IMG/VR virus record: IMGVR_UViG_3300044568_003163
Coordinates: 124,001 to 188,000 of that record
Strand: one strand, 5' to 3'
Length of the DNA stretch: 64,000 bases
Position 1 is the stretch's first letter. Each line of letters opens with the position of its first letter. The notes under the pieces were generated by a model. It was not told the origin of the DNA. It ran no database searches and saw only the letters and a program-made list of their open reading frames with translations. Below are positions 42,686 through 57,513 of this stretch, in pieces. The position numbers and the translations under genes are program-made.

Positions 42686-42686
42686 A

Positions 42687-43610
42687 TTAGTTAAATAGTG
42701 TTGGATATAATTGTTCTACTTCAGTTGGCGCTGGCATTTTAGCCGATACAATATAAATTTTAAATCTATTTAGAATAGCATCTAAACGATCTTTGTGTAT
42801 AAATGTTGGTGATGTTGCTAATGCGAATGCATTTTCAAAAGTCATAATTTCGGCAGGTTTAACACCTTCACCAAAAGCAAATTTAACAACTTCTTCTGGT
42901 GTACTCGTAATGAATTTGTCTTGGTCATGTAAAAGAGTGGCAGTTTTAACTAATGAACCCTTTTTGCCCATGAAAGTTTTTTCTACTTGATAGATTCCTT
43001 TCTCTAAACGAATAACATATTGTTTGTATTGTTCGGTTTCTCCGGTTTCCGTTTTCTTAGTAGTTTCTTTCATACATTCAGAAACTATCGACATTAGGAG
43101 TACATTTCGGTACATTCCTTTGTATTTCGATTCTGCAATTTTAAAGTTTGGCGAGTAATACATAAAACGAGACCAATCTAAATTAGTAGAAAGCATAAAA
43201 TCTACTTGTGCAGTTCCACTATTTTTCTTACCTCCTACCGGAACTCCGATAGATATTTGTTCAAATCCTTTTGCAGTTCTAGTTGAATATCCTTCTTTCT
43301 TAAATGTATCTTCTAAAAATTGTAGTGCATCTTCCATCGATATTCCATTAACTCCAGCAATTTTATCTACTGAAACTGCAATATCTATGTCACCACTAGT
43401 AATTTCATCGGCTTTCTTACCATATGAACCAATTGGTGATGCATCAATTCCTTTACCTTCTAATCCGATTAGAGGAAATAAAGTCTTTTCAACCCACTCA
43501 TAAGTAGCAAGTACTTCAGGTTGAGTTAGAGGACGAGAATCCTCAATAGCATTTCCACTTTCGTTCAAAAACGTAGAAACAAAATCTTTAAATTTTAGCA
43601 TATTTCTCAT
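42687..43610 (-). CDS. leader-bearing Pol-beta-superfamily nucleotidyltransferase
   Basis: MLKFKDFVSTFLNE; IGSYGKK...SGDIDIAV...QVDFM. Confidence 0.75.
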   Translation of the reverse strand: MRNMLKFKDFVSTFLNESGNAIEDSRPLTQPEVLATYEWVEKTLFPLIGLEGKGIDASPIGSYGKKADEITSGDIDIAVSVDKIAGVNGISMEDALQFLEDTFKKEGYSTRTAKGFEQISIGVPVGGKKNSGTAQVDFMLSTNLDWSRFMYYSPNFKIAESKYKGMYRNVLLMSIVSECMKETTKKTETGETEQYKQYVIRLEKGIYQVEKTFMGKKGSLVKTATLLHDQDKFITSTPEEVVKFAFGEGVKPAEIMTFENAFALATSPTFIHKDRLDAILNRFKIYIVSAKMPAPTEVEQLYPTLFN

Positions 43611-43612
43611 AT

Positions 43613-43837
43613 TTATTCTTCTTCACATTCATATGCAGGACCAATTCCTTTGATAGGCACCTTTAATTTTTTACCTGTTTTATCGTCAACCACAATTATA
43701 TAATCGCCTTTAACTTCAGCAACTTTTCCTGTATGATTTACGTGAGTTCCAGGAACTATGTATTCGATGATGTTTCCTGGTCGAACATGGGAATATGCTT
43801 CGGCAATAAATTCCTCGTAAGTAGGTAATTTTTTCAT
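43613..43837 (-). CDS. leader-bearing small SH3/KOW-like protein
   Basis: MKKLPTYEEFIAE, nearly the T4 CTS. Confidence 0.7.
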   Translation of the reverse strand: MKKLPTYEEFIAEAYSHVRPGNIIEYIVPGTHVNHTGKVAEVKGDYIIVVDDKTGKKLKVPIKGIGPAYECEEE

Positions 43838-43852
43838 TCTAACTTTCATTTT

Positions 43853-44521
43853 TTATTGAATACCTTTAACCGAATAAGAGGTTATTAATTTTCTGTTATT
43901 TGCTGGTCTAGCCTTAAATGCTCTTAATGGGTAATAGTCATAATCGTGAGATTTTAACATTTTCAATAAATCATCTTTAGTAGCTTCTGACATATCAACA
44001 ATTGTATGTTTCTTACCTAATCTTCGGTTAGTATCATTTCCAATCAACTCAACTTCATCACCCTTTTCAAAAGAATCCTTAGTACCTAATAGTAAATAAC
44101 TTCCACTAGTTAAAAATGCATATAGTCCTTTATTTTCAAAAATAGACCAACCAAACATCGTAGCACCGGTAGTCATATTAATAACACCTACACTAAGTAC
44201 CATTGCTCTTAAAGAACGTCCTTCATTAAGTGAAGACTCACATAAGCTTTCATCAATTTTAGTTACGTTAGCATTTAAGTAATTCAAATCTACGTCGATA
44301 GCTAAACTAACATTTTTCTTTTTAGCCAAATCATTATCTGGCTTAATAGTAATTTCATCTGCAGATCTTCTTCGGTTAAAGAGGCCACTCATTCCTCTAG
44401 GTTTAACTACTTTCCAAGCTTCACCATCTTTGAAATGGATAATTGCATCTACTGGAAAATCTGTTATTTTAAACGAATTAGCTTCATTTAAGAAGTTTTC
44501 GAATGTAGGTATGTTTTTCAT
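43853..44521 (-). CDS. leader-bearing two-module protein
   Basis: MKNIPTFENFLNE; internal ESLCESSLNE. Confidence 0.75.
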   Translation of the reverse strand: MKNIPTFENFLNEANSFKITDFPVDAIIHFKDGEAWKVVKPRGMSGLFNRRRSADEITIKPDNDLAKKKNVSLAIDVDLNYLNANVTKIDESLCESSLNEGRSLRAMVLSVGVINMTTGATMFGWSIFENKGLYAFLTSGSYLLLGTKDSFEKGDEVELIGNDTNRRLGKKHTIVDMSEATKDDLLKMLKSHDYDYYPLRAFKARPANNRKLITSYSVKGIQ

Positions 44522-44536
44522 ATTATGTTATATGTT

Positions 44537-44956
44537 TTAATTTTTTATTGATTCTATTGTTAGTGTACAATCATCCATTAGACTGCCTAAAGCCGTTTGT
44601 ATTGCTGATTGAGATTCATCTGACGTAAACGTAACTAATTTTGTATAGTTTTCATGATGAGCATCAATTAAAAAATGATTCTTTAGCACTTTGAGAACTT
44701 CTGATGCAATTGAAGGTGTATCACAATCAATTTCGTAAGATTTATCTCTAGCTTCATTCATTGGCTTATTGATTTTACCTTTCTTTTCATGAAGAAGTCT
44801 TAATCTTTCTCTAAGGATTGCTTCTTGCTTTTCTCGGTTATCTTCCGGCAAACCTTTGATTTGCTTTTTAATTTCCTTAATTTTAGCTTGAATGTTGTCC
44901 ATTAAAGACTCAGCAGATTCACTAATAAATTCTTCAAATGTAGGTAAGTTCTTCAT
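44537..44956 (-). CDS. leader-bearing protein
   Basis: MKNLPTFEEFISE. Confidence 0.75.
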   Translation of the reverse strand: MKNLPTFEEFISESAESLMDNIQAKIKEIKKQIKGLPEDNREKQEAILRERLRLLHEKKGKINKPMNEARDKSYEIDCDTPSIASEVLKVLKNHFLIDAHHENYTKLVTFTSDESQSAIQTALGSLMDDCTLTIESIKN

Positions 44957-44964
44957 AGGTTAAT

Positions 44965-44995
44965 TTGCTATACAAATATAAACAATTTTCTCGAA
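44965..44995 (-). promoter_or_regulatory. host-type promoter (TATATTTG) without upstream box
   Basis: TATATTTG at 44973-44980. Confidence 0.5.
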
Positions 44996-45015
44996 AGAAA
45001 AAAATTTATTTGAAA

Positions 45016-46428
45016 TTATTTTTTGTGATTTTCTTTCCAAATTCCTTGCAACCAATCGTGCAATTCTTTGTTATTGTCTTTCTTACCAATGCCGTATTCT
45101 TTAATAAATTCAGCTTTAAATTCATCAAAAGTAGCAGCCTCTTCAGCCATAATATGAACATCACCCATAGCAGATTCTGCAATAAAAGTAGAAGATTCTT
45201 TGATATTAGTTTCCCAATAATCATGAAGTTTTTCAAATTCTTTACGACCCATATTAGCAATCATGTACTCTACGATATCGTTATCGTAGTCTTCCGCTTC
45301 ATCTCTATAACCACCTGGAGTATCAATATATTTGCTACCCATGATTCTTTTGATTCTAACTTCTGGCATTCCATCAATTTCTTCTAAGAATTCTTCAAAG
45401 TCTTTAGTTGCTTTGAATTTTTCAGCTTCATTAACGTAAGACTCTTTCATTAATGCTAAAGCACCTAATTCACTTAATGTAACTTTTGCGCCTTTATCTT
45501 TACCATTAACAGAAGAATGATATAACAATCCAGCATTAAACAATCTTTTTAAAACTTCACCTTTAACTAAATCAAAGCTAATTGTATCGCTTACATTATC
45601 CCATGAATCTACTACATATTCCGGTTCAATCCAACCATAACCTCTTTTAATGTTTTTAATCAAAGTTTCTACGTCTTTGTCGAATTGCTTAGCGGCAGCT
45701 TCATTAACTGAAGATTCAAATACTTGAGTATCATCCTTATTCCATTCACCTCTTTTAACAAATCCATGAACTGTAAAATTTGCTTGAGATATTCCGGTAG
45801 CTTTTACCAATTTGTTAATAGCATCGACTTCTACTTTTGCGTTGCTAATTCCTTTGATATACTTAAATTTGTATGTCTCTTTATTTTTAAAATCTAGAAC
45901 TTTAAAACCGTCGTAAAATTTAGTCATATCTCCTTCATTAATAACAGATTCATTAAGATAACCGTTATGTCTAAGATATTTTATCAAATCATTTTTATCT
46001 CTAGAAGGTATTTTATCAGCGTTGATTGTATATCCATCTTTTGATTTTACTACATCAATATCTGATTTTACATAAAGATTTTGACTGATCCATTTAATTA
46101 AACGTGTATGGTCAATGTCTGAAATATTCTTAAGATTAATATTTTCTTCATTAACAGATTTAACTTTACCTGAAAGAATTTTCTTAGCTTTGTCTAAGTC
46201 TCTTTGATTTTTGAAGATTAAGTTACCATCATCAGATACTTGAGGAAATGCATAATGTTGGTAAGGAATTCCTTTAAACAAAACATTCAAATAAGCAGTT
46301 GTTAAATTCATGTTAGCTGGCAAATCGTCATAATTAATGCGATATTTCGTATCCCATAGCTTTGCTTTCGGATCATTTAAAATGTCTTCATTTACGAAGT
46401 CTTCGTAAGTTGGTATATGATTTTTCAT
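45016..46428 (-). CDS. leader-bearing putative polyprotein (about six modules)
   Basis: MKNHIPTYEDFVNE; five internal SVNE/SVINE/SSVNE/SYVNE/FIAE linkers. Confidence 0.75.
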   Translation of the reverse strand: MKNHIPTYEDFVNEDILNDPKAKLWDTKYRINYDDLPANMNLTTAYLNVLFKGIPYQHYAFPQVSDDGNLIFKNQRDLDKAKKILSGKVKSVNEENINLKNISDIDHTRLIKWISQNLYVKSDIDVVKSKDGYTINADKIPSRDKNDLIKYLRHNGYLNESVINEGDMTKFYDGFKVLDFKNKETYKFKYIKGISNAKVEVDAINKLVKATGISQANFTVHGFVKRGEWNKDDTQVFESSVNEAAAKQFDKDVETLIKNIKRGYGWIEPEYVVDSWDNVSDTISFDLVKGEVLKRLFNAGLLYHSSVNGKDKGAKVTLSELGALALMKESYVNEAEKFKATKDFEEFLEEIDGMPEVRIKRIMGSKYIDTPGGYRDEAEDYDNDIVEYMIANMGRKEFEKLHDYWETNIKESSTFIAESAMGDVHIMAEEAATFDEFKAEFIKEYGIGKKDNNKELHDWLQGIWKENHKK

Positions 46429-47442
46429 TTATGATTGGTTTAATTTTTTTCTTAATTCTTTATAAAATGGATGAACCGATTTAGGAGTTAAAATCTTAAA
46501 TGCAGTTTCATCGTCAGCTAAAATAGCTTCTCTAACTTTAGTTCCTGAAGGACCACCTTCTTGTCTGCTATCAACCATTGCAACCGAAAATTCATCAACA
46601 GGTACATCAGATTTTTCAGATGTTAAATAGGCAACTTGTCTTTCATAATCTTTTTGTCTATCAGATCCACAACCTACACCAATCGGATTAAATCCCTTTT
46701 CTTGAATAAATTTTACCATTTGAGGTATTACTGTCTTATTACCAAGAGGGTACATCGCAAATTCTTGAATAAAATCAAATTCACCAGCTACTCGATGACC
46801 TATTTTTGATAATAGAAGAACATCAAATGGAGATTTTTCGGTCTTTGAAAATATTTGTAATGGGATAACAGGACAACCAAATGCCTGTGAAGTTCTTCTT
46901 AGAGCTTCAATATGTCCATTATGAAATGGTTGAAATCTACCAGGAAATATACATACTCGTTTGCCATCGATAGTAGCTTCGAATACTTCGTTTTCGTTTA
47001 ATTTATCAATAAAGCTTCTAAACATTGGTTTTACTTTATCGGCTAATTTACTAAATAGTCCAGGATTTTCTTCTGGAACTACATCCGGAGAAGCATTTCT
47101 AATAGTACTATCTACCATATAATCGTTAACAAAAACTTTAGCATCTTCTTCAGTTTCTATTTTACGTTGAACCATACTGAAATCTCCAGTGTCTTGTAAC
47201 ATCTCACGTGAAGTAGTAGGAGATACTGCAAAATGATTACCGAGTTTTTTATTCATATCACCAAAAGCAACATCTACTGTCTTTCCAACAATAGTACCTA
47301 TTAAGTCTTTTACTGTATTTTGTACCTTTTCATCTTTAATAATTTGCAAAGCAAAATATTTGATAGCTGGTGACATAGATTCACAGATGATCTGTTCATT
47401 TGATTCGTTAACGAAATCTTCAAAATGAGGTATGTTTTTCAT
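46429..47442 (-). CDS. leader-bearing HxGH nucleotidyltransferase (cytidylyltransferase/NMNAT-like)
   Basis: MKNIPHFEDFVNE; FPGRFQPFHNGH, GSDR, SGTKVRE. Confidence 0.8.
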   Translation of the reverse strand: MKNIPHFEDFVNESNEQIICESMSPAIKYFALQIIKDEKVQNTVKDLIGTIVGKTVDVAFGDMNKKLGNHFAVSPTTSREMLQDTGDFSMVQRKIETEEDAKVFVNDYMVDSTIRNASPDVVPEENPGLFSKLADKVKPMFRSFIDKLNENEVFEATIDGKRVCIFPGRFQPFHNGHIEALRRTSQAFGCPVIPLQIFSKTEKSPFDVLLLSKIGHRVAGEFDFIQEFAMYPLGNKTVIPQMVKFIQEKGFNPIGVGCGSDRQKDYERQVAYLTSEKSDVPVDEFSVAMVDSRQEGGPSGTKVREAILADDETAFKILTPKSVHPFYKELRKKLNQS

Positions 47443-47721
47443 TTATTCTTCTAGTTTTAATTGTTTGATCGGTTTAACGAAAGATGAATCTACATTTGTA
47501 AAAATTTCACCATAATAATCATCTAAAATATCATAAAATACTTTAGCTTTAGAAAAACTAACTTTTACAATAGTTCCAAAACGATAATCTCGAGTAATTT
47601 TTCGATCATCTGCTTGTTTAGCCGATGGCACAAAATCCACTTTATCATCTATTGAATAGGCTGATGGAAATTCAGTAGCACCTTCGTACAAGAAATTATC
47701 AAATGTAGGTATGTTTTTCAT
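47443..47721 (-). CDS. leader-bearing small SH3-like protein
   Basis: start reassigned to MKNIPTFDNFLYE. Confidence 0.75.
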   Translation of the reverse strand: MKNIPTFDNFLYEGATEFPSAYSIDDKVDFVPSAKQADDRKITRDYRFGTIVKVSFSKAKVFYDILDDYYGEIFTNVDSSFVKPIKQLKLEE

Positions 47722-47722
47722 A

Positions 47723-48910
47723 TTATTTACGGCATTCACCTTCTTTAATTGCAAATTCTTGAGCAATAGATTTAATCGCTCTATCGTCAGTATTTGATAT
47801 CGAAGTATGGAAGAATTTACTACCATCTTCATTTTTAAATAAACCTTTTACTGATTTACCCATCCAAGTTTTCCAAGGAAGAGATTCACCATAAGCTTTA
47901 ATAGCTTTGTCTCCGGTTTTGATTGTTACTTTGTTATTATTACTTGCCGCTGCTACATATTTTTTAGCATCTGCATAATTCTCATCCATATAAGCATTAA
48001 AATACTTTACGAATTTTTTTGCGTTTTCATTATCTTCAGCTGAAGAGATGAATTTTTGTTCAATGATTGTGTAGAATATAATGTCAACTACATTGGTAAT
48101 TGATTGAACTTCTATTCTAATTCCTAAATCAGGAGATAAACTTTCGTTTATGAATTTCTTAAATGTAGGAACTTTGCTTTCATTATATGGAAACCTAACA
48201 TCGATTTTACCACCAGAAAGAGATTTAGCAACTTTATTAACTTGATTTGGTTCAATCTTAGGCATTTCTGGTCTTGGTGGAGCACCAGCTGGAGGACCAA
48301 ATTTTTGTATCAATTTAAGACCAAGTTGAACCTTTGATTTATTAGCTTCATACCAAGCAACCGCCTTTTCTTTATTATAGAATTGAGGTTCCATGTTTTG
48401 ACCATCATATATACAATTCTCAATATCTTTAATTGTTGCATTGAATATATTGACATCTCCACCAGAAGGAATTCCACCTCTTTCGTTACCTAAAGCATCA
48501 CCGGCTTGTCTTAAAACTGGAACTAAGTCACCAATAGATAATTCAGCTTTAGCACCAATTACTTTAGCATTTGGATCGTTAAACATAGTAGCTGCCCATC
48601 GATGATGACCATCTAATATTCTATTATCTGAAGATATTATTGCATCTAACTTACCTCCTTTAACCCCAGCAATTGCTAGTCCTAATGCTTTACCTAAATA
48701 AACAGCATCTTGTGACGGTTTAAGTGATTTAGCAGGAATACCAGCATCTTTTGTAATTACGATATCATCGGTTGGATTTCCATCTCTTTTACCGTCAGTA
48801 AAAAAATCTGGATCGTTTTTATCGCCTGGATTAGGAAATTTTACCGGATTTATTTCTTTCGTACTTAATTCTTCATTTAAGAATTGCTCGAACGTAGGTA
48901 TGTTTTTCAT
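47723..48910 (-). CDS. leader-bearing ParB/Srx-like protein fused to a second leader-bearing module
   Basis: LKPSQ...ILDGHHRWAA; internal KVPTFKKFINE. Confidence 0.75.
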   Translation of the reverse strand: MKNIPTFEQFLNEELSTKEINPVKFPNPGDKNDPDFFTDGKRDGNPTDDIVITKDAGIPAKSLKPSQDAVYLGKALGLAIAGVKGGKLDAIISSDNRILDGHHRWAATMFNDPNAKVIGAKAELSIGDLVPVLRQAGDALGNERGGIPSGGDVNIFNATIKDIENCIYDGQNMEPQFYNKEKAVAWYEANKSKVQLGLKLIQKFGPPAGAPPRPEMPKIEPNQVNKVAKSLSGGKIDVRFPYNESKVPTFKKFINESLSPDLGIRIEVQSITNVVDIIFYTIIEQKFISSAEDNENAKKFVKYFNAYMDENYADAKKYVAAASNNNKVTIKTGDKAIKAYGESLPWKTWMGKSVKGLFKNEDGSKFFHTSISNTDDRAIKSIAQEFAIKEGECRK

Positions 48911-48926
48911 ATAATATGTATCTCGT

Positions 48927-49799: not shown

Positions 49800-49811
49800 A
49801 ATTTTTGTATT

Positions 49812-50617: not shown

Positions 50618-50636
50618 ATTTTTATTTAGATGATCG

Positions 50637-51098
50637 TTATTTTATTAGTAAGTTTTTGAAAAAATCTCGTTCGTCTGCCTTTACTGCATATAAGTAAAAA
50701 CTTCTATCATTTCCATTAACATATCTTATTGATTTGATAGATTTCATTTCTAAAACTCCTAATTGAACTGGATTTAAAGGGAATGTTATATCAGTTATAC
50801 CATCACACGTTAATTCAATATTCGATCTAATTGTCATATATTTGCCATCGACAAAAGTAAATATTAATGCATCTCTTTTACTGCATTTTCCAATATTTAA
50901 TTTTATTGTGATTAAATAATTTTTTTCAGATATTCCATTATATTTTTTAAAATGAGGTATAATGGTAAACCATTTACTTCTGTCTTCAGTAGAACAGATC
51001 AACATAGAATTTTCTTCCTTTTTAGTTGTAGGCTGTTCGTTTTGTGAATTACCAACAAATGTTAGTAATAAAAATAGTAAGATGCATAATTTTTTCAT
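50637..51098 (-). CDS. secreted hypothetical protein (no leader)
   Basis: Sec signal peptide MKKLCILLFLLLTFVGNS-Q. Confidence 0.7.
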   Translation of the reverse strand: MKKLCILLFLLLTFVGNSQNEQPTTKKEENSMLICSTEDRSKWFTIIPHFKKYNGISEKNYLITIKLNIGKCSKRDALIFTFVDGKYMTIRSNIELTCDGITDITFPLNPVQLGVLEMKSIKSIRYVNGNDRSFYLYAVKADERDFFKNLLIK

Positions 51099-51112
51099 TA
51101 GATTTATATTTT

Positions 51113-52378
51113 TTATGAATAAGCTTCGATGTCATATTGAATTCTTTCTAAAGGAGTTTCGTCGTTGCAAAGATTTTTCTTAACCCAATCAAGTAAACCT
51201 GGTTCAAATTTAGCATTTTGTGCCATATCATAAGCATTTTCTGCACCACCATTACCGGACATATCTTTAACCCATTTGTCATATATCTTTTTATTCCATG
51301 AATGTGCTTTTTGTTTCTGTGCATGAGGTCCATTACCTAAAGTAGAGAAAACCGCCATAGATGAATTAGGAATAAATACGTCTAATAAACCTTCAGTGCC
51401 TGATTTACCATTGTCATATTTAATTTCTCTTCTAAATTTTGCCAATGCATAATCTGCAGATGCTATTTGAGATGAACTTGACATTGCTCCAGTTTTCTTA
51501 CCGTAAGCTTTTTTAAGTTGCAGTTGTTTATCTGGATCGATTTCAAAGTGAATATCTCTGATATAATCATCAAACCAACCTTCATTTAAAAAAGATTCCA
51601 TAATACATTCATAAACATCACCTTTGAAGTTTTGGAGACCTCTTTCTTTACTATAATATAAAGTCAATGGTTGGTTACTACGATTTAGTAAATCAATTTC
51701 TTTGATATTACTCGAACCTCCTAATATTTTCTTTATCGTATAGGTTCCTACATCTCCAGTTCTACTATTTTTTAATTCTATAGTATCTTTTACTTTCATT
51801 TTAGATACGTCAAAATCTTCATTCACACCTTCCATAAGATTACCACCTCCATCAATTCCAGCACTATGCCAATATTCACCTTTACCATTATAAGTTTTAG
51901 TAAATGCTACATACTCTTTTGTTTTAGGATTCCAAAAGTGACTTTCACCATTAGAGGCTGTCATCATTTTTAAAATACCACTTTTAGCATCTTTTATCAG
52001 TTTTAATTGAACTGCTCTAGTTAAAGGCTCTCTAACTTTTAGTTTAGAAGGACTAGCTGCTGATAATGCTTCATCGATTTGCAAAGATTCTAGCATTTCA
52101 GGAGTTTCATTAAAATTTAAACTATTTCCTGATGCAACCGAAATTCCAGCAGCACCTCTAAGAGAAACTCGTAAATTGAATTTATCTCCTTTTTCGTTTT
52201 CTGCTGCTAAATCTCGAGTAGCATTAGTTTTTTGACCATAAGCTATAATAGTATAAGTTTCGGCTTTAGTTTTAATTACTGATCCAATTCTTAATTTATT
52301 AGCATCTTTAGGACTTAAATATCCTTCATTAATGATTGACTCATTAACAAAATCTTCAAATGTAGGTATGTTTTTCAT
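51113..52378 (-). CDS. leader-bearing putative polyprotein (about four modules)
   Basis: MKNIPTFEDFVNESIINE; internal ESLQIDE, EGVNE, ESFLNE. Confidence 0.75.
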   Translation of the reverse strand: MKNIPTFEDFVNESIINEGYLSPKDANKLRIGSVIKTKAETYTIIAYGQKTNATRDLAAENEKGDKFNLRVSLRGAAGISVASGNSLNFNETPEMLESLQIDEALSAASPSKLKVREPLTRAVQLKLIKDAKSGILKMMTASNGESHFWNPKTKEYVAFTKTYNGKGEYWHSAGIDGGGNLMEGVNEDFDVSKMKVKDTIELKNSRTGDVGTYTIKKILGGSSNIKEIDLLNRSNQPLTLYYSKERGLQNFKGDVYECIMESFLNEGWFDDYIRDIHFEIDPDKQLQLKKAYGKKTGAMSSSSQIASADYALAKFRREIKYDNGKSGTEGLLDVFIPNSSMAVFSTLGNGPHAQKQKAHSWNKKIYDKWVKDMSGNGGAENAYDMAQNAKFEPGLLDWVKKNLCNDETPLERIQYDIEAYS

Positions 52379-52390
52379 GGTTATATAATT

Positions 52391-53200
52391 TTAGTATCTT
52401 CCGTATCCTACTGAGCTTTCAAATGAACCTACAAAGTAATTAGTTCCATCAACATCGATCGTTACAGATGAAGATAATTCGGTAATGTCTACTTGAGTAA
52501 ATCCAATAGAATTAGAAATTGTTTTATTATCAACTCTAGAAACATCTTTATTGATTTCGATTTTAGAATCAGGAGTTAATTTGATTTTGTTTTTTCTAAG
52601 ACCAGCAATTATCATTTTATAAACTCTTTCAAAATCTGATCCTGAATATGCAGAATAGTTACATTCTTTGTTTACTGCAACTGCTAAGTTTAATCTAGCA
52701 GCAGGTGTTCCGGTTGACCAAGATTTTAAAACTTCAATCAAATTAGTTAGTGCATCTTTCATTGCTGGCAAATCTTTATTTTCAACAGTAAACGAAGGCT
52801 CGATTAATTTAACCGCTTCAGTAATAGGTCCTTGAGACCTTCCTCCTGGCGAAGCATCAGTATATATGAATGCCAAAAATTCAATAATTGGTGCAGTTGC
52901 TTTACCTGATCTTAAATAATCAGCAGCAGACTTAGCAACTTCTTTGAATTGAGCACCTGGAGATTTAGTAAAATAGCTAGGTCTTAATCCAGCAGATGGC
53001 CAACCTGCATCATAATGAAATAAAGTAAATAGTGGTTCGTGATCGATTCCATCTTTATAACCTTTAGCCGATCTAAATCGTAAAGTTTTTTGTAATGCAT
53101 GAGAAGTAGCAAAATCTAATCCATTTTCTTGTAGAGCTTCGTTGATAGAAGTTAATTTTGATTCATTAACGAAATTCTCAAATGTAGGTATATTTTTCAT
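52391..53200 (-). CDS. leader-bearing protein
   Basis: MKNIPTFENFVNE. Confidence 0.75.
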   Translation of the reverse strand: MKNIPTFENFVNESKLTSINEALQENGLDFATSHALQKTLRFRSAKGYKDGIDHEPLFTLFHYDAGWPSAGLRPSYFTKSPGAQFKEVAKSAADYLRSGKATAPIIEFLAFIYTDASPGGRSQGPITEAVKLIEPSFTVENKDLPAMKDALTNLIEVLKSWSTGTPAARLNLAVAVNKECNYSAYSGSDFERVYKMIIAGLRKNKIKLTPDSKIEINKDVSRVDNKTISNSIGFTQVDITELSSSVTIDVDGTNYFVGSFESSVGYGRY

Positions 53201-53208
53201 TTATGTGA

Positions 53209-53514
53209 TTACTTTTTATTAATAGTTACGCTAAAGGTATATTCTTGATTGCCAGGAACTTGTATATAAATGTCATATTTTTTAGCATTATCCCAAAGAG
53301 ATAATGACGTACCAAAAGATTGATGCATGTAAAATACTACACTATCACCTTTATCCCAGATTTGACTGATAGCATATCTAGGAGAAGTATACATCTGATC
53401 CTCTAATATTTTTTTAAAGTGAGGATAAGATTTACACAACTCTTCGTATTGTTTGAAATTCTCAGTTGTAGATGATTCGTTTACGAATCCGTCAAAGGTA
53501 GGTATGTTTTTCAT
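53209..53514 (-). CDS. leader-bearing protein
   Basis: MKNIPTFDGFVNE. Confidence 0.75.
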   Translation of the reverse strand: MKNIPTFDGFVNESSTTENFKQYEELCKSYPHFKKILEDQMYTSPRYAISQIWDKGDSVVFYMHQSFGTSLSLWDNAKKYDIYIQVPGNQEYTFSVTINKK

Positions 53515-53616
53515 TATAGTTCTTTAGATAATCTACTAATAATTTCTTGGTTATTAGCGATACGTTTTTGATTTTTAAGTTGGTTACCTCTATTAGGTTT
53601 TTGTTTGCCTTCTTTT

Positions 53617-53895
53617 TTAGATTTCGACATTATGTTTGATTATTTTGATTCGAACATCAGATGTTCCTTGTATAATTCTATGTATCTCACCGCATTTGAT
53701 GAATATTTCTTGATTAAGAGAAATAGGCAATTGGTTATCGAATTGAAACTGCCAATCCGTAGAATCCATTGCTTGAATGGTTCTATCTTGTTCATCCCAA
53801 TGCCATTTGAATTCTTCAGGATGAGTATCAGCACTAAATGTTCTTATAAAAACATTATCTCCTAAATCTTCTTCTATAAAGGGCAATTCTACCAT
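53617..53895 (-). CDS. cupin-like small protein
   Basis: WHWDEQDR...WQFQFDNQLP...HRII. Confidence 0.65.
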   Translation of the reverse strand: MVELPFIEEDLGDNVFIRTFSADTHPEEFKWHWDEQDRTIQAMDSTDWQFQFDNQLPISLNQEIFIKCGEIHRIIQGTSDVRIKIIKHNVEI

Positions 53896-54434
53896 GGATT
53901 GTCAGATGAAAGTCCTAATTGTTTAGTAAAAAGTGAAGGAGCATAGCAAGCCCAAAATCCTTTTTTAGAAGGATCCATTTTCTTTTGTAAATCACATTGT
54001 TGTCTAGCCCAAAAAGATGAAGCAGCTCCTTCATCGGCATTATTAATTGCACGATTTGGATCTCCCCATTCTATTTTAGTAGCAATGATATTTCCATCAT
54101 CATCTTTCTTACCACTGTTGTGATAAACTTGATATTTTTGTTCTCCGCCTCTTTGTGGTGTGTCTAATTTAACATCTATCCATGAATCATTGTCAGTTTT
54201 GAATTTAGCCTTTTTACCTACTTCTAGGTTCTTTGCCATCCAAGCTGATTTTCCATTTAAGATGATATTTCCTTTGTCCCAATATTGTTTTGCCTCTTCA
54301 AATAAATCATCATAAGCTTGTGAACCTAAACGAAATACTGAAGTAGATAAATCTAGTCCATTTGCTTGGTGATATTTGAAAGCTTCTGAAGAGTTTTCGC
54401 GAATGAAATCTTCAAATTCTGGTATGTTTTTCAT
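53889..54434 (-). CDS. leader-bearing protein
   Basis: MKNIPEFEDFIRE; WGDP...FWARQQC...FWAC. Confidence 0.75.
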   Translation of the reverse strand: MKNIPEFEDFIRENSSEAFKYHQANGLDLSTSVFRLGSQAYDDLFEEAKQYWDKGNIILNGKSAWMAKNLEVGKKAKFKTDNDSWIDVKLDTPQRGGEQKYQVYHNSGKKDDDGNIIATKIEWGDPNRAINNADEGAASSFWARQQCDLQKKMDPSKKGFWACYAPSLFTKQLGLSSDNPW

Positions 54435-54444
54435 ATAATTTTAT

Positions 54445-54490
54445 TTTTATAGTACAAATATAAACATAATTTCCGATACTAGGAAATTAT
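54445..54490 (-). promoter_or_regulatory. host-type promoter (TATATTTG) with hairpin
   Basis: TATATTTG at 54455-54462; ATAATTTCC/GGAAATTAT. Confidence 0.5.
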
Positions 54491-54602
54491 TTTAAACCCT
54501 TTTTAATTTCGTCGTATATCATGAGCATAAAAAGTAGGCCCATTATTCCAGCAAAGAAAGGTAGGCAATTAGGTTCAGAATTCACTGCATTAAACGATTA
54601 TT

Positions 54603-55544
54603 TTAGTATATGTCACCGGTTCTTAACATAGAAGATATGTCTGTAAAATATGCCATTTCTTCTGGAGTTAATTTAGATTTAATATATTTTCCAATTGTTG
54701 CTAATTCTCGAGCTCTGGCACTATATGCATTGGCCTTATATGGTGGCAAATCTTGATACATTTGTGCAAGTCTCGTATCACCATCAAATTTCTTAACGAT
54801 TTCAGCAATTAGTTCTTTTCTTTTACCTTTTGCTGCCATCTTAGCTTTTGACTCAGCTTTATTAGCAATTGCTTCTGCTGCATCTCCAAGAACATTACCT
54901 ACAACAGGTAAACCTTTAGCTAACGCCCATAAACCAGCTATTCCAACTGCTACGCCTATTGCAACATCGGCAATTAGACCAGCATCTTCGTTAATTACTG
55001 ATTCTCTGATCGAAATTTGCAAATGTTTCTTTATTGCAACTTTCATTTTAGTAATACTATTAATATTTTTATTCAACGGAGATTGTTGTCTTCCATCTTT
55101 GTATAATTCTATATAAGTATCACCCTCAGCACCACTAACTACTCTAATAGTACATAATGGATATTTTACGTTATTATAATCATCGTGGTATAATCTTCCT
55201 CTGCCGATAGGAGTTACATATGATTTAGATTCTTTACGAATCCAACCATTTTGTGTTAATACATCACCAAAGTCATGGCTATTATTTTCGTTTATTGATT
55301 CTCGAATTTCAAATCCATCAGCTTCGATTGCTTTTTTAGCTTTACGTAATTCGATAGCGTTAAGTGCCTTAACTACCATTTGTTCTGAATCATGTATTGC
55401 TGGTTCTGCAATTGCATCAACTCCAGCATCCATCAGAACATTTTGAATGTATTCTACGTCATCGTCGTCAGTATTATATTGAATCGAAAATGTATATTCT
55501 TTTGCTTCGTTGATGAAATCTTCAAATGTAGGTATGTTTTTCAT
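54603..55544 (-). CDS. leader-bearing putative polyprotein (three modules, last with a TM helix)
   Basis: MKNIPTFEDFINE; internal IRESINE and IRESVINE. Confidence 0.75.
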   Translation of the reverse strand: MKNIPTFEDFINEAKEYTFSIQYNTDDDDVEYIQNVLMDAGVDAIAEPAIHDSEQMVVKALNAIELRKAKKAIEADGFEIRESINENNSHDFGDVLTQNGWIRKESKSYVTPIGRGRLYHDDYNNVKYPLCTIRVVSGAEGDTYIELYKDGRQQSPLNKNINSITKMKVAIKKHLQISIRESVINEDAGLIADVAIGVAVGIAGLWALAKGLPVVGNVLGDAAEAIANKAESKAKMAAKGKRKELIAEIVKKFDGDTRLAQMYQDLPPYKANAYSARARELATIGKYIKSKLTPEEMAYFTDISSMLRTGDIY

Positions 55545-55550
55545 TTATGT

Positions 55551-55838
55551 TTATATTTTGATTTTTTTAACTTCGTAACCAGTATAAGAATCTTTGTCTT
55601 CTGGGTTGTGGAACCTATAAAAGGTCTTAAATTCATAATCATGTCTAGCTGGATTAAACCACTCATCATCATATTCATATTCATGGCTTTCTGCCCATTT
55701 CTCAGCTTCGATCTTAGAATTCCAATATTCTAATGTATAAGGAACATCATCTCCATGATCGCCATAAAAGATAACTTGCCATTTTTCATTTTTAACCGCT
55801 TCGTTAATAAACTCTTCTAATGTAGGTAGTTTGTGCAT
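55551..55838 (-). CDS. leader-bearing protein
   Basis: MHKLPTLEEFINE. Confidence 0.75.
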   Translation of the reverse strand: MHKLPTLEEFINEAVKNEKWQVIFYGDHGDDVPYTLEYWNSKIEAEKWAESHEYEYDDEWFNPARHDYEFKTFYRFHNPEDKDSYTGYEVKKIKI

Positions 55839-56218
55839 TATTTACTTTTTGGTATATTTCTATTGAAAATTATTGAAGATTCATTATCGTTAACTCTAAC
55901 TATTCTAAAATATATTCGATTCGTTTTGTCTTGATACAATGTTCGATTTAAACTTCCTACTGTACCTGCTATAGGAAATAGATTTTCTACCTTTTGAATA
56001 AATAATTGTTCATCTTTTAAATTCTTAAAATAAACATTAATATACAATTCAGATTTAGAACCAGATGCAAATCTAGAAACATTACTATCAAATCTCACAC
56101 CAGATACTAAAGTCTTCATACTATTTATTGAAGATTCTATATCTGCTTTAAGAGATTCCTTGTTGACCGGAGTTCCGCTTTCGTTTAAGAACTCTTCAAA
56201 AGTAGGTATGTGATTCAT
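55838..56218 (-). CDS. leader-bearing protein
   Basis: MNHIPTFEEFLNE. Confidence 0.75.
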   Translation of the reverse strand: MNHIPTFEEFLNESGTPVNKESLKADIESSINSMKTLVSGVRFDSNVSRFASGSKSELYINVYFKNLKDEQLFIQKVENLFPIAGTVGSLNRTLYQDKTNRIYFRIVRVNDNESSIIFNRNIPKSK

Positions 56219-56223
56219 TGTGA

Positions 56224-57513
56224 TTATTTTTTATATGCGATCATCGAACGGATTTGGTGCAATGGTGCAAAAATTCCAGTATACTTGTAAAGCTTACCTT
56301 TAAATAAGAAAGTAATTCCTTCGGTAGGCACTATTGATTCTAAACCACCAGCAGCAGCAACTCTACTCAATTCATGTTCTAATTTTTCAATGTCTTTCTC
56401 ATCGCCATTAACTCTAATTTTAGCAATAGAATCCTCTATTTCTTTTTTCATAGTCATGGCAGCTTCAGTTGGATTTGCGGATAAAAATGATGTGATATTT
56501 TTCATCATTTCCGTTCCTATTTCTAAGAAGATATTTTCAAGAGGAGCGTAAACTTCTCTCTTCCAAGCTTTTGCTTTTTTCTTTTCTAAATCAATAAACC
56601 AATTTGCGTTATCACCTAAGTCTTTTTTGATTTGTCCTACTGAGTAAGATTTATCAATATCTGCAAGTCTTCTAGCTAATCCATCAAGTGAATTTTCCGG
56701 CAAAGTAATTCCAGCATCATTAGCTTCTCTTGTGATAATGTTCTTACCCATACCTAAAGCATAATCACCAACAGTAGATGTTTGATTACAATTAGAATCC
56801 GACATTATTTGTGATAGTTTATCAGCATAGTATTTAGCTCTCGCTTTAGTATTTGGTAGCGGTTGATATGCAATATCTTGAGGACCTCTAACGAAGAAAG
56901 TTTCTTGTGCTGCTGCATTAGCGTCAGCTATTAACTTACCTAATTCTCTAGCTGCTTGTTTGTCTTCATCGATTACATTTGCAGCTTCATCATACTCAAC
57001 AACTCCATGAAACACTAACATATTTTGTCCATAAGGCACAGTATTTTGTGTAACTGGTGTGATTATTTCTACTGATGCAAATTTTTGTCCTTCGTTAAAA
57101 AATCTCTTTTTATCTTTATCTGATAGAGAACCTATCGAAGCAGTAAGATCAGCCATAGCTGCATTAAATGCAATTTCTATATCACCTCTACCGGCAAAAA
57201 GTTCTGCAGTTGTAGCAGAATTTAAAGCATTTTCACCAAAGTTTTTAAGGTGAGTTTTATTTCTCGCTGAAATCAATTGACCATTCTTCCAAGAGATAGA
57301 AAGTTGTTGACCATCAGTTTTTTCTTGTACAAAGTTTTCTGGACCGAACGCTCCATTAACGGTAGTTTGTAGCATTTCTTCTAAATCCAAAAAGGTCAAC
57401 CCGATATCCTCGAAAGGATGTGCGAGATGACCATAGGCACCACCCTCATTGAGAGGTACGTTAATGGATTCGTTCAATTTCTTAACGAAATCGTTAAATT
57501 TAAGTAGTTTCAT
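56224..57513 (-). CDS. leader-bearing ATP-dependent ligase-fold protein (DUF6267-like)
   Basis: MKLLKFNDFVKKLNE; HLAHPFED, EKTDG (KxDG), EII, EGITF, YKYTG. Confidence 0.65.
   Translation of the reverse strand: MKLLKFNDFVKKLNESINVPLNEGGAYGHLAHPFEDIGLTFLDLEEMLQTTVNGAFGPENFVQEKTDGQQLSISWKNGQLISARNKTHLKNFGENALNSATTAELFAGRGDIEIAFNAAMADLTASIGSLSDKDKKRFFNEGQKFASVEIITPVTQNTVPYGQNMLVFHGVVEYDEAANVIDEDKQAARELGKLIADANAAAQETFFVRGPQDIAYQPLPNTKARAKYYADKLSQIMSDSNCNQTSTVGDYALGMGKNIITREANDAGITLPENSLDGLARRLADIDKSYSVGQIKKDLGDNANWFIDLEKKKAKAWKREVYAPLENIFLEIGTEMMKNITSFLSANPTEAAMTMKKEIEDSIAKIRVNGDEKDIEKLEHELSRVAAAGGLESIVPTEGITFLFKGKLYKYTGIFAPLHQIRSMIAYKK

What the first reader, a model, noticed from the sequence alone, without database searches (positions are those of the whole stretch)
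42687..57513. Three nucleotidyl-transfer enzymes tagged for packaging
Seen: a Pol-beta-type NTase (GS...DxD), an HxGH NTase and a KxDG ligase-fold protein all carry leaders. Two share the LKF-type variant. Inference: a pre-made injected pathway acting before phage transcription, such as RNA end repair or capping, NAD regeneration, or protein or DNA-end nucleotidylation.
Basis: partly seen in the sequence, partly recalled or inferred. Interest (0 to 1): 0.7.

Follow-up and report, generated by a model that had tools for sequence, protein, structure and literature searches.

The report
Capsid-tagged nucleotidyl-transfer enzyme trio
A 294-kb T4-like phage encodes an RNA-ligase-like enzyme, a polymerase-X-like enzyme and an NMNAT-like adenylyltransferase that all start with a T4-style capsid-targeting leader and that lie side by side or are fused into one protein in many uncultured phages, which marks them as one undescribed and probably injected nucleic-acid end-repair kit.

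Summary
On the minus strand, 42687-43610 encodes a Pol-beta-superfamily NTase (GS..DxD..D). 46429-47442 encodes an HxGH NTase (Pfam PF01467). 56224-57513 encodes a KxDG protein. All three start with the leader that opens about 20 of the 22 genes from 41129 to 57513 and about 45 of 412 genes genome-wide, against 0.8 expected by chance.

Predicted structures refine the calls. The KxDG protein has an RNA-ligase-type adenylyltransferase fold. The NTase resembles the palm and thumb of family X polymerases. The HxGH protein sits nearest archaeal NMNAT and PPAT.

- Close relatives keep the order KxDG..HxGH..NTase, with 0 to more than 15 variable leader-tagged genes in between.
- 82 of 149 KxDG-family representatives are fused to the HxGH domain, and three proteins fuse all three domains.

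Packaging is inferred but well grounded:
- The genome encodes a gp21-type prohead protease.
- The leaders end in (L/I/V)-x-E.
- Leader-bearing HxGH homologues were found by mass spectrometry in virions of two T4-like cyanophages.

The chemistry is unknown. I favour RNA (tRNA) end healing and sealing. The main rivals are DNA-end or gap repair and a role in NAD+ supply. I found no description of this module in the literature searched.

The parts
56224..57513 (-). KxDG protein (429 aa): RNA-ligase-type adenylyltransferase fold with a ~220-aa helical insert between motifs IIIa and IV. It has an LKF-type leader (res 1-15; a second L-N-E|GG site at res 21-25).
   Evidence: Motifs are KTDG 57310-57321, ARNK 57256-57267, SVEII 57061-57075, EGITF 56308-56322 and KGKLYK 56284-56301. 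The model has pLDDT 90.2. VIA-align gives Z 9-10 to NgrRnl, T4 Rnl1, Trl1-LIG and T4 Rnl2, against 6-7 for DNA ligases. No Pfam, PHROG or NCBIfam hit was found.
46429..47442 (-). HxGH (HIGH-motif) nucleotidyltransferase, 337 aa. It consists of a PTF-type leader, a ~140-aa extra segment, and a 185-aa catalytic domain that begins after a second h-x-E site (VFE|A, res 153-156).
   Evidence: PF01467 at E 2.8e-5. phrog_3041/395 'cytidyltransferase'. GRFQPFHNGH lies at 46912-46941 and PSGTKVR at 46531-46551. The family profile hits MJ0951/UPF0348 at 1.1e-6, MJ0541 NMNAT at 5.1e-6, and PPATs.
42687..43610 (-). Pol-beta-superfamily nucleotidyltransferase (307 aa) with a Pol X-like palm and thumb. It has an LKF-type leader (res 1-17, LNE|S).
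   Evidence: GSYGKK lies at 43413-43430, DIDIA at 43377-43391 and QVDFM at 43194-43208. The model has pLDDT 88.6. Foldseek finds Pol lambda/beta at E 1.6e-6 with TM 0.36-0.40 over res 26-254.
41129..42685 (-). Third LKF-leader protein (518 aa), immediately downstream of the NTase. Its function is unknown. A large protein occupies this position in relatives.
   Evidence: The leader is MKMLKFKDFV..LNE|A. It hits phrog_1462, of unknown function. Only weak Atlas leads to restriction-endonuclease clusters were found, at score 0.86. Relatives carry a 420-600-aa ORF after the NTase.
47723..48910 (-). Leader-tagged 395-aa protein with a ParB/Srx-like 'DGHHR' segment. The same domain is fused to HxGH-KxDG proteins elsewhere.
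   Evidence: DGHHR lies at 48599-48613. BLASTP and jackhmmer find the domain in 10-11 of 149 KxDG-family proteins. There is no Pfam support for ParB, so that name rests on the motif alone.
43613..46428 (-). Four leader-tagged cargo genes of unknown function, lying between the NTase and the HxGH gene (78, 222, 139 and 470 aa).
   Evidence: Leaders are listed. There are no family hits.
47443..47721 (-). Leader-tagged 92-aa gene between the ParB-like gene and the HxGH gene.
48927..56218 (-). Variable cassette array between the KxDG gene and the ParB-like gene. It holds 10 leader-tagged genes, one signal-peptide ORF (50637-51098) and one untagged ORF (53617-53895).
   Evidence: Gene 54603-55544 hits phrog_2667 'internal head protein' at E 6e-4. 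The number of genes in the matching interval varies from 0 to more than 15 in relatives.

Best explanation
The three genes form the conserved backbone of one phage module: an RNA-ligase-type adenylyltransferase (KxDG), a HIGH-motif adenylyltransferase of the NMNAT/PPAT kind (HxGH), and a Pol X-like nucleotidyltransferase.

Each is made with a T4-type capsid-targeting propeptide. I infer the following sequence of events:
- The propeptide takes each enzyme into the scaffolding core of the prohead.
- The gp21-family protease trims it after the Glu of (L/I/V)-x-E.
- The mature enzymes are ejected with the DNA, so they are present before any phage gene is expressed.

Most likely they heal and seal broken nucleic-acid ends. 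The Pol X-like enzyme would restore missing 3' nucleotides. The ligase-like enzyme would seal through a Lys65-AMP intermediate. The preferred substrate would be RNA, namely tRNAs cut by host anticodon nucleases. The HIGH enzyme would supply or recycle an adenylylated cofactor such as NAD+, or adenylylate a 5'-phosphate.

Shown: gene anatomy, motifs, folds, synteny, fusions, and the presence of the protease.
Inferred: packaging and cleavage in this phage, the substrate, and the role of the HIGH enzyme.
For: One module:
- Close IMG/VR relatives keep the order KxDG..HxGH..NTase. Eight of 10 hold all three within the DNA fetched, with the NTase starting 6 nt to 7.1 kb downstream of the KxDG gene end in those loci (L002).
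- 82 of 149 family representatives carry HxGH and KxDG in one chain. P0441, P0456 and P0461 carry all three domains.
- Microcystis phage Mel-JY01 has a 639-aa HxGH-KxDG fusion.
- Atlas clusters show CTase plus Pol X-palm fusions.

Packaging:
- The leader is shared by about 45 unrelated genes and ends in V/L/I-N-E.
- The genome encodes a Peptidase_S77 (gp21) protease fused to a scaffold that carries 9 such sites, 1.41 per 100 aa against 0.23 genome-wide.
- The leader regions are low-confidence linkers in the models. E17 of the NTase is nevertheless invariant.
- The first 10 residues of T4 IPIII suffice for packaging, and foreign enzymes fused to them are delivered into cells (PMC9026906).
- HxGH homologues beginning MRFRQFIIEA or MKNFSSFLTEA were detected by LC-MS in purified virions of S-SZBM1 and S-CREM2 (PMC9146016, PMC10665884).

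RNA end repair:
- The best structural matches of the KxDG protein are RNA ligases.
- Other family members carry CCA/poly(A)-type NTase heads with an RNA-binding domain (4 proteins) or P-loop kinases (5 proteins).
- The pairing of an RNA ligase with a Pol-beta NTase has a precedent in RlaP. That enzyme adds 1-2 NMPs to damaged RNA 3' ends.
Against: - There is no virion proteome, transcriptome or enzymology for this phage or its near relatives.
- In cyanophage S-SZBM1, the KxDG-like neighbour gp141 (Pfam DUF6267) has no leader and is not in the virion list.
- The triple fusion P0461 starts directly with the HxGH domain, without a leader.
- Two promoter-like motifs of the kind found before many other genes lie inside the block. 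Expression timing is therefore unknown.
- Pol X enzymes are typically DNA enzymes, and capsid-internal proteins sit on DNA. Both facts favour a DNA substrate.
- No role for a HIGH NTase in known RNA repair pathways is documented. The Tpt1 match in the genome is sub-threshold.
- The predicted KxDG-HxGH complex gave no answer.
Confidence: 0.4

Rival explanations
1. DNA-end or gap repair of the incoming genome. The Pol X-like enzyme fills gaps or extends ends, and the ligase-like enzyme seals nicks or circularises the injected DNA. This would work like a viral BER/NHEJ kit of the ASFV/NCLDV Pol X plus ligase type, pre-loaded on the DNA in the capsid.
For: The NTase's best matches are Pol lambda, Pol beta, TdT and Pol mu, across palm and thumb. 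Atlas structure neighbours include NCLDV Pol X-ligase fusions. The neighbouring LKF protein has weak restriction-endonuclease leads. Internal head proteins are embedded in the packaged DNA.
Against: The KxDG fold ranks RNA ligases (Z 9-10) above DNA ligases (Z 6-7), and it has no OB or DNA-binding domain. The NTase lacks the 8-kDa and fingers domains, and TM is only 0.36-0.40. Fusion partners include CCA/poly(A)-type NTases with an RNA-binding domain. The phage has its own LigA for DNA.
Confidence: 0.25
2. An NAD+-centred function. The HxGH enzyme is the phage's NMN adenylyltransferase and completes a NAMPT to NMNAT salvage route. That route would feed the NAD+-dependent LigA and counter host NADase defences. 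The KxDG partner would use NAD+ (or an NAD-derived nucleotide) as its AMP donor, or act on an NAD-related substrate.
For: The GRFQPFHxGH and SGTxxR motifs are present, and the best NCBIfam and PDB sequence neighbours include archaeal and NadM-type NMNATs. The genome encodes NAMPT and LigA. Its only other CTase is a TagD-like 153-aa protein. Phage NAD+ salvage systems are known.
Against: Scores are far below every NMNAT equivalog cut-off (20-27 bits against 127-181). PPAT and UPF0348 score as well or better. NAD+ supply does not explain the steady fusion to an RNA-ligase-like domain or the Pol X-like partner. No RNA-ligase-type enzyme is known to use NAD+ (my own knowledge).
Confidence: 0.15
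3. Co-delivery rather than a shared pathway. The fusions and synteny exist because all are capsid cargo strung together, like cargo polyproteins cut by the prohead protease. The three enzymes would then act on unrelated targets.
For: Domain junctions in the fusion proteins mostly read (L/I)-x-E just before the GG that opens the KxDG domain, and also before the NTase domain of P0461. The region between the genes is a variable array of unrelated leader-tagged cassettes. Many other domains join the fusions.
Against: The HxGH-KxDG pairing recurs far more often than any other (82 of 149, against 3-11 for the others). It appears in both orders. In cyanophage-like loci it persists as an adjacent gene pair (73 of 73) in which the KxDG-like partner carries no leader in S-SZBM1.
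Confidence: 0.12
4. The leader is not a packaging signal. It could instead be a conserved 5' gene end kept by cassette recombination, a translation-initiation element, or a signal for another location.
For: The first 39 nt are similar at the DNA level in many cassettes. There is no direct virion evidence for this phage. About 45 cargo species is far more than T4's handful.
Against: The leader is kept at the protein level in relatives as distant as 35-45% identity, with different codons and variants. It ends in the protease motif. Two leader-bearing HxGH homologues are virion proteins. Giant phage heads can hold more than 50 protein species.
Confidence: 0.08

Closest known systems
T4 internal proteins IPI/IPII/IPIII and Alt with their capsid-targeting sequence (CTS), processed by the gp21 prohead protease
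   Same: A short N-terminal peptide is shared by otherwise unrelated proteins and ends in hydrophobic-x-Glu. The genes sit in variable arrays. A gp21-family protease, a gp23-type capsid protein and a portal are present. Alt shows that an enzyme can be delivered this way.
   Different: Here about 45 genes (11% of the genome) carry the leader, against a handful in T4. Two leader subtypes (PTF and LKF) are each kept by their orthologues. The cargo includes a conserved set of three nucleotidyl-transfer enzymes. The protease is fused to the scaffold.
Phage and bacterial RNA repair sets: T4 Pnk + Rnl1, Pnkp/Hen1, and RNA ligase + RlaP (PF10127) Pol-beta NTase
   Same: An RNA-ligase-fold adenylyltransferase is genomically coupled to a Pol-beta-superfamily NTase. 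Some family members add a P-loop kinase or a CCA-adding-type NTase.
   Different: There is no HMM membership in Rnl1, Rnl2 or RlaP. The NTase is Pol X-like rather than RlaP. The constant partner is a HIGH NTase, which known RNA repair sets lack. The enzymes carry capsid-targeting leaders, whereas T4 Pnk and Rnl1 are made after infection.
Pol X plus ligase repair pairs of large DNA viruses (ASFV Pol X + ligase; NCLDV Pol X-ligase fusions)
   Same: A minimal Pol X-like palm and thumb is associated with, and sometimes fused to, a KxDG ligase-superfamily enzyme.
   Different: The ligase partner here resembles RNA ligases and lacks an OB domain. The NTase has no Pfam Pol X domain hit, and TM is only about 0.4.
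T4-like cyanophage 'cytidylyltransferase' next to DUF6267 (S-SZBM1 gp140/gp141; S-CREM2 gp154)
   Same: The HIGH NTase is homologous to the HxGH family here (HMM E 2.6e-9 and 2.5e-5) and has a CTS-like N-terminus. It was found in virions by mass spectrometry. In 73 of 73 cyanophage-like loci it directly follows a KWDG-motif DUF6267 gene. Atlas places the window's KxDG protein next to DUF6267-labelled clusters at score 0.97.
   Different: Profile-profile comparison of DUF6267 with the KxDG family is not significant (E 0.4). DUF6267 in S-SZBM1 has no leader. No Pol X-like partner was seen there. The authors read the enzyme as an auxiliary metabolic gene.
Phage NAD+ salvage (NAMPT/NadV plus NMNAT, NadM/NatV type)
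   Same: The HIGH NTase has NMNAT-type motifs, and NAMPT is encoded in the same genome.
   Different: There is no Nudix or kinase fusion in this gene. It is not adjacent to NAMPT. It is leader-tagged and coupled to a ligase-like enzyme. Scores are below the NMNAT cut-offs.

Membership tests
T4-type CTS-targeted internal head proteins | Short N-terminal propeptide shared by unrelated proteins of one phage | tested here: met
   45 of 412 genes match against 0.83 in shuffles. 18-20 of the 22 genes in the block carry it, including all three enzymes.
T4-type CTS-targeted internal head proteins | Propeptide ends in a (L/I)-x-E site for a gp21-family prohead protease encoded by the phage | tested here: met
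   The leaders end in V/L/I-N-E. PF03420 scores 49.9 bits at G000:246708-247052. The same motif is six-fold enriched in the scaffold part. Cleavage after Glu is the rule for T4, phiKZ and SPN3US.
T4-type CTS-targeted internal head proteins | Protein present in the mature head, N-terminally processed, and ejected on infection | not testable with these tools
   There is indirect evidence only. HxGH homologues with like leaders are in the virion proteomes of S-SZBM1 and S-CREM2.
Covalent nucleotidyltransferases (ATP-dependent RNA/DNA ligases, capping enzymes) | Motif I KxDG with the catalytic lysine, plus motifs Ia, III, IIIa, IV and V in order | tested here: met
   K65, D67, G68, R84, E149, H169 (in VFHG), E398-G399 and K410 are invariant in 34-39 sequences at 34-81% identity. 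Assigning the later motifs to these positions is my inference.
Covalent nucleotidyltransferases (ATP-dependent RNA/DNA ligases, capping enzymes) | Nucleotidyltransferase domain fold | tested here: met
   Foldseek's top 33 hits are all ligases (best E 8.4e-4). VIA-align gives Z 9-10 over 190-218 residues for NgrRnl, T4 Rnl1, Trl1-LIG and T4 Rnl2. TM is low (0.22) because of the ~220-aa helical insert.
Covalent nucleotidyltransferases (ATP-dependent RNA/DNA ligases, capping enzymes) | Formation of a lysyl-AMP (or -GMP) intermediate | not testable with these tools
   This needs labelling with [alpha-32P]ATP, NAD+ or GTP, and a K65A control.
Known RNA ligase families (Pfam RNA_lig_T4_1, RNA_ligase) and DUF6267 (PF19782) | Match to the family HMM above its cut-off | tested here: not met
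   There are no Pfam, NCBIfam or PHROG hits for the KxDG protein. PF19782 finds nothing in the genome at E<=10. hhalign of DUF6267 against the family gives E 0.4. Only the Atlas language-model search links it to DUF6267 clusters, at 0.97.
Family X DNA polymerases | GS..DxD plus a third carboxylate in the palm | tested here: met
   G61, S62, D74, D76 and D137 are invariant.
Family X DNA polymerases | Palm and thumb architecture | tested here: inconclusive
   Foldseek gives E 1.6e-6 and probability 1.0 to Pol lambda and Pol beta over res 26-254. However, TM is 0.36-0.40 and rmsd 6-7 A. There is no Pfam DNA_pol_B_palm or thumb hit.
Family X DNA polymerases | Fingers (HhH) and 8-kDa lyase domains | tested here: not met
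   Alignments start at Pol beta residue 148 and Pol lambda residue 385. The protein has only about 25 ordered residues before the palm.
RlaP (PF10127) RNA-ligase-associated Pol-beta NTases | Match to PF10127 | tested here: not met
   There is no match in the genome at E<=10, while the control genomes do match. Only the genomic logic (an NTase beside an RNA-ligase-like gene) is shared.
HIGH-motif nucleotidyltransferases (PF01467 CTP_transf_like) | HxGH motif, a C-terminal SxTxxR-type motif, and a match to PF01467 | tested here: met
   PF01467 scores 24.8 bits against a cut-off of 21. H174, H177 and S299-G-T-K-V-R304 are invariant in 32 sequences.
NMN adenylyltransferase (TIGR01527, NF002243, NadM) | Score above the equivalog cut-off, and NMN-binding residues | tested here: not met
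   Scores are 20-27 bits against cut-offs of 127-181, and only the first ~25 residues of the domain align. The family profile hits MJ0541 NMNAT at 5.1e-6 but MJ0951/UPF0348 at 1.1e-6 and PPATs at about 3e-5. The substrate cannot be assigned.

The most novel reading that the evidence does not exclude
A large, unrecognised class of phage 'time-zero' enzymes. The core is an RNA-ligase-like (DUF6267-related) adenylyltransferase permanently coupled to a HIGH-motif adenylyltransferase, often with a Pol X-like or CCA-type NTase, a kinase or a ParB/Srx-like domain.

These would be made either as separate CTS-tagged proteins or as giant polyproteins. The prohead protease would cut the polyproteins at (L/I)-x-E junctions inside the capsid. 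The enzymes would be injected with the DNA to repair host-inflicted damage to tRNA, RNA or the DNA ends before the first phage transcript is translated.

The HIGH enzyme would catalyse a step not known in any repair pathway, for example making the ligase's nucleotide donor on site or adenylylating the 5'-phosphate end.
Probability: 0.3. Interest if true: 0.85.

Novelty: new variant of a known kind. Interest (0 to 1): 0.72.

Why it matters
If the module is injected, it would be a pre-made nucleic-acid repair activity carried in a phage head. I found no report of a virion-packaged RNA ligase. This would extend the T4 Alt/IPI idea of injected counter-defence proteins to RNA or DNA end repair.

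The KxDG family is large: 1,580 clusters at 50% identity. Most of the sources holding these proteins give them no name or call them 'hypothetical protein'. The related Pfam entry DUF6267 appears in no paper of the library searched.

The finding also gives a concrete reading for the unexplained 'cytidylyltransferase' seen in two cyanophage virion proteomes. It predicts a testable processing rule, cleavage after (L/I/V)-x-E, for dozens of cargo proteins and for giant multi-enzyme proteins. The leader could also serve as a packaging tag for phages outside the T-even group.

Tried and rejected
- T4 late promoter TATAAATA. One copy lies 20 nt upstream of the KxDG gene, but the octamer is not enriched (27 sense hits against about 55 expected) and is not found before the capsid gene. 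I dropped it as timing evidence.
- De novo intergenic motifs. These gave a repeated terminator-plus-promoter-like cassette (TTGTTAATAACTTT..hairpin..TTATATTTGT). Partial copies lie before 53889-54434 and 44537-44956. They do not settle early versus late expression.
- Predicted KxDG + HxGH complex. The result was no answer, with score 0.00. It counts neither for nor against binding.
- DUF6267 relationship. hhalign with one sequence (E 0.48) and with 81 cyanophage sequences (E 0.4) was not significant, although motif I and the VFH motif align. PF19782 finds nothing in this genome.
- RlaP and ATP-dependent DNA ligase PF01068 are both absent from the genome. Tpt1 (PF01885) gives only a 15-bit match that runs across a stop codon at window 55496-55711, which I read as chance.
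- PHROG and Pfam scans of 10 further small leader proteins found nothing. The single 'internal head protein' PHROG hit (54603-55544, E 6e-4) is weak.
- tblastn of a leader-bearing N-terminus against 50,697 phage records found no match. Megablast of the whole block found none either.
- Stenotrophomonas phage Moby and Xanthomonas phage X1 hold an HxGH homologue but no detectable KxDG or NTase partner nearby.
- Sequence-only searches of the PDB with the KxDG and NTase proteins and their family profiles found nothing. Only fold comparison places them.

Full report
**Setting.** The window is bases 124001-188000 of a single 294,034-bp viral contig with about 32% G+C, and almost all genes are on the minus strand. 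The genome has a T4-type head module:
- a gp23-family capsid protein (PF07068, E 2.4e-36);
- an adjacent ORF that I read as the portal;
- a Peptidase_S77 (gp21) prohead protease, here the N-terminal part of a 637-aa protein whose remainder is a long coiled-coil scaffold.

**The observation.** Twenty-two tightly packed minus-strand genes run from 57513 down to 41129.
- About twenty begin with a near-identical peptide, MKNIPTFEDF(V/L/I)NE followed by S, A or G, or with the longer variant M..LKF.DFV...LNE.
- A strict pattern fits 45 of 412 genes genome-wide, against a mean of 0.83 and a maximum of 4 in 200 shuffles. A looser pattern fits about 55.
The NTase (42687-43610) and the KxDG protein (56224-57513) carry the LKF variant, as does the adjacent 518-aa gene 41129-42685. 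The HxGH protein (46429-47442) carries the common variant.
- Motif coordinates are given.

**What the three proteins are.**

*HxGH protein.*
- It passes the Pfam threshold for CTP_transf_like and hits PHROG 'cytidyltransferase' families.
- Its family keeps GRFQPFHxGH, GCGSDR and GGPSGTKVR invariant.
- With a family profile, the nearest solved proteins are MJ0951/UPF0348 (1.1e-6), the archaeal NMNAT MJ0541 (5.1e-6) and PPATs.
- NCBIfam NMNAT models align only to the first ~25 residues and score far below their cut-offs.
- It is therefore a HIGH-motif adenylyl/cytidylyl-transferase of unassigned substrate, and NMNAT is the best single guess.

*KxDG protein.*
- It has no sequence-family hit anywhere.
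- A confident model (pLDDT 90.2) matches only ligases. VIA-align gives Z 9-10 for Naegleria Rnl5, T4 Rnl1, fungal Trl1-LIG and T4 Rnl2, and 6-7 for DNA ligases.
- The invariant residues K65, D67, G68, R84, E149, H169, E398-G399 and K410 fall where ligase motifs I, Ia, III, IIIa, IV and V are expected.
- A ~220-residue helical insert separates motif IIIa from motif IV.

*NTase.*
- Its model (pLDDT 88.6) matches the palm and thumb of Pol lambda, Pol beta, TdT and Pol mu over residues 26-254. The E-value is 1.6e-6, but TM is only 0.36-0.40.
- Cid1 and CCA-adding enzymes match only the ~150-residue core.
- The carboxylate triad D74/D76/D137 is invariant.
- From memory, the stretch around the DxD motif also reads much like that of Pol beta. 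I treat this as a lead, not a test.
- It is not RlaP.

**Are they linked?** Yes, and this is the strongest result.
- All three have hundreds of metagenomic homologues, and many share contigs.
- In relative L002 the order is KxDG, three small leader genes, HxGH, a 74-aa gene, NTase, then an LKF-leader protein, all within 5.4 kb.
- Of the ten closest IMG/VR loci, nine show HxGH and eight show the NTase downstream of KxDG. One further locus, L109, has the order KxDG, NTase, HxGH.
- The NTase starts between 6 nt and 7.1 kb downstream of the KxDG gene end in those loci, against 12.6 kb here. Between 0 and more than 15 mostly leader-tagged genes lie in between.
- The three genes are thus fixed anchors of a hyper-variable cargo array.
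- An exhaustive search found 1,580 clusters (50% identity) with the KxDG domain. Most of the best 150 are 550-1,900-aa proteins with that domain at the C-terminus.
- Using HMMs built from the window's own families, 82 of 149 also contain the HxGH domain. Three (P0441, P0456, P0461) contain all three domains.
- Pfam confirms PF01467 in 15 of the 19 fusion proteins scanned. It adds AAA_33/Zeta-toxin kinases, a PolyA_pol head with its RNA-binding domain, DUF5661 and inteins.
- Local iterative searches count 5 kinases, 4 CCA/PAP-type NTases and 11 copies of the 'DGHHR' domain of window gene 47723-48910.
- A cultured example is the 639-aa 'cytidylyltransferase like protein' of Microcystis phage Mel-JY01. 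It is HxGH plus KxDG, and the KxDG part is 33% identical to the window protein at E 1e-79.

**Is the leader a packaging tag?** This is inferred, from four lines of evidence.
1. Its form matches the T4 CTS, where ten N-terminal residues of IPIII suffice for packaging. Residues 4 and 7 matter for targeting and residues 8 and 10 (Glu) for cleavage. Foreign enzymes fused to it are delivered into cells.
2. The leaders end in (L/I/V)-N-E, and gp21-type proteases cut after Glu. The same tripeptide is six-fold enriched in this phage's scaffold. The capsid protein has I-I-E|S at residue 18.
3. The leader segments are low-confidence linkers in both models, yet E17 of the NTase is invariant.
4. There is experimental precedent for homologues.
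   - S-SZBM1 gp140 starts MRFRQFIIEA and hits the HxGH HMM at 2.6e-9. S-CREM2 gp154 starts MKNFSSFLTEA and hits at 2.5e-5. Both were detected in purified virions by LC-MS.
   - In 73 of 73 cyanophage-like loci with enough sequence, such a gene directly follows a DUF6267 gene that carries a KWDG motif.
   - The Atlas language-model search places the window's KxDG protein among DUF6267-labelled clusters at 0.97. Profile-profile comparison does not confirm this (E 0.4).

Many of the giant fusion proteins also start with a leader-like peptide, for example M.(E/K)L(S/T).(F/W)L(V/T)...(L/I).E. About three quarters have (L/I)-x-E immediately before the GG that opens the KxDG domain. They may therefore be polyproteins cut inside the prohead.

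Three points count against packaging:
- S-SZBM1 gp141 (DUF6267) has no leader and is not in the virion list.
- P0461 has no N-terminal leader.
- There are no data for this phage itself.

**What does the module do?**
- The RNA-ligase fold, the companion 3'-end NTases of two different kinds (Pol X-like or CCA/PAP-like with an RNA-binding domain), and the occasional P-loop kinases recall RNA end healing and sealing. Known examples are T4 Pnk/Rnl1, Trl1 and ligase plus RlaP. RlaP was recently shown to add one or two NMPs to damaged RNA 3' ends.
- Delivering such enzymes as protein would let them act before the first phage protein is made.
- The Pol X-like fold, the position of internal proteins on the packaged DNA, and weak nuclease leads for the neighbouring LKF protein keep DNA-end or gap repair alive as a rival.
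- The role of the HIGH enzyme is the open point. The genome also encodes NAMPT, an NAD+-dependent LigA and only one other CTase, which is TagD-like. The HIGH enzyme could therefore be the phage's NMNAT.
- That reading alone does not explain its constant fusion to the ligase-like domain.

I put the module claim at about 0.85, packaging at about 0.7 and RNA repair at about 0.4. The combined statement stands at 0.4.

**Novelty.** CTS-targeted cargo and ligase-NTase repair pairs are both known. I did not find this conserved three-enzyme set described, nor its fusions, its leader tagging, or its link to the cyanophage virion 'cytidylyltransferase'. No paper in the library mentions DUF6267 or Mel-JY01, and none combines virion packaging with an RNA ligase. 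I class it as a new variant of known kinds, with a real chance of hiding a new reaction.

Noticed in passing
whole genome G000; clusters at about 32-35 kb, 109-117 kb, 165-181 kb (window 41129-57513), 225-255 kb and 272-282 kb: About 45 (strict) to 55 (loose) of 412 genes start with the same leader, roughly 11% of the gene set. This is a far larger putative capsid cargo than the handful known in T4.
   Followed up: partly
G000:245208-247121 (L001), outside the window: The gp21-type prohead protease is fused to a long coiled-coil scaffold in one 637-aa ORF. That ORF carries nine [LIVF]NE tripeptides, and what looks like the portal gene lies just upstream.
   Followed up: partly
window 46429-47442: This copy of the HxGH gene has a ~140-aa extra segment between the leader (VNE|S) and a second site (VFE|A). 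In the 190-200-aa orthologues the second site follows the leader directly. It looks like an in-frame fusion of a cargo cassette onto the enzyme, and cleavage at both sites would release the segment.
   Followed up: partly
L002:11331-12113: A 260-aa ORF in a relative carries two leaders, one at the N-terminus and one internal (KNLPTFDEFLNES). This suggests that cassettes fuse and split easily.
   Followed up: no
window 47723-48910: A leader-tagged 395-aa protein has a ParB/Srx-like 'DGHHR' segment (48599-48613). Its domain recurs in 11 of 149 HxGH-KxDG fusion proteins, so it may be a fourth member of the module.
   Followed up: partly
window 50637-51098 and 53617-53895: These are the only two genes in the block without the leader. 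The first has a signal-peptide or lipoprotein-like N-terminus. The second overlaps its upstream neighbour by 7 nt.
   Followed up: no
about 30 intergenic sites genome-wide, e.g. upstream of window 3205-3645, 13173-13556 and 25946-26473; partial copies upstream of 53889-54434 and 44537-44956: A repeated regulatory cassette occurs: TTGTTAATAACTTT, a GC-poor hairpin with a T-run, then TTATATTTGT(A/C). The last part resembles the Bacteroidota -7 promoter element TAnnTTTG (my own knowledge), which hints at a Bacteroidota host.
   Followed up: partly
G000:79397-80932, G000:~44.5-45.2 kb, G000:~123.0-123.5 kb: The phage encodes a NAMPT-type nicotinamide phosphoribosyltransferase, a LigA-type NAD+-dependent DNA ligase and a second, TagD-like 153-aa cytidylyltransferase. 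No ATP-dependent DNA ligase was found.
   Followed up: partly
L020-L099 (IMG/VR cyanophage-like loci); L011 (S-SZBM1): In 73 of 73 loci the DUF6267 gene (KWDG motif) is directly followed by a HIGH NTase gene. Its product starts with a peptide like MRFRQFIIEA, which closely resembles the T4 CTS.
   Followed up: yes
P0361, P0509 (KxDG-family homologues): Some homologues carry an intein (Hint/Intein_splicing) inserted shortly after motif I of the KxDG domain. Inteins are commonly found in essential, conserved enzymes.
   Followed up: no
window 57992-59212: A 406-aa family-2 glycosyltransferase-like gene lies upstream of the KxDG gene. A GT2 gene of similar size (415 aa) holds the same place in relatives L002 and L003.
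   Followed up: no
Prevotella Lak megaphages (e.g. MK250016.1 526759-527565); huge phages LR756500.1 and LR756508.1: The Pol X-like NTase has 26-30% identical homologues in all 15 Lak megaphage records. In LR756500 the KxDG and HxGH homologues lie 1.5 kb apart on the same strand, and in LR756508 they appear fused.
   Followed up: no
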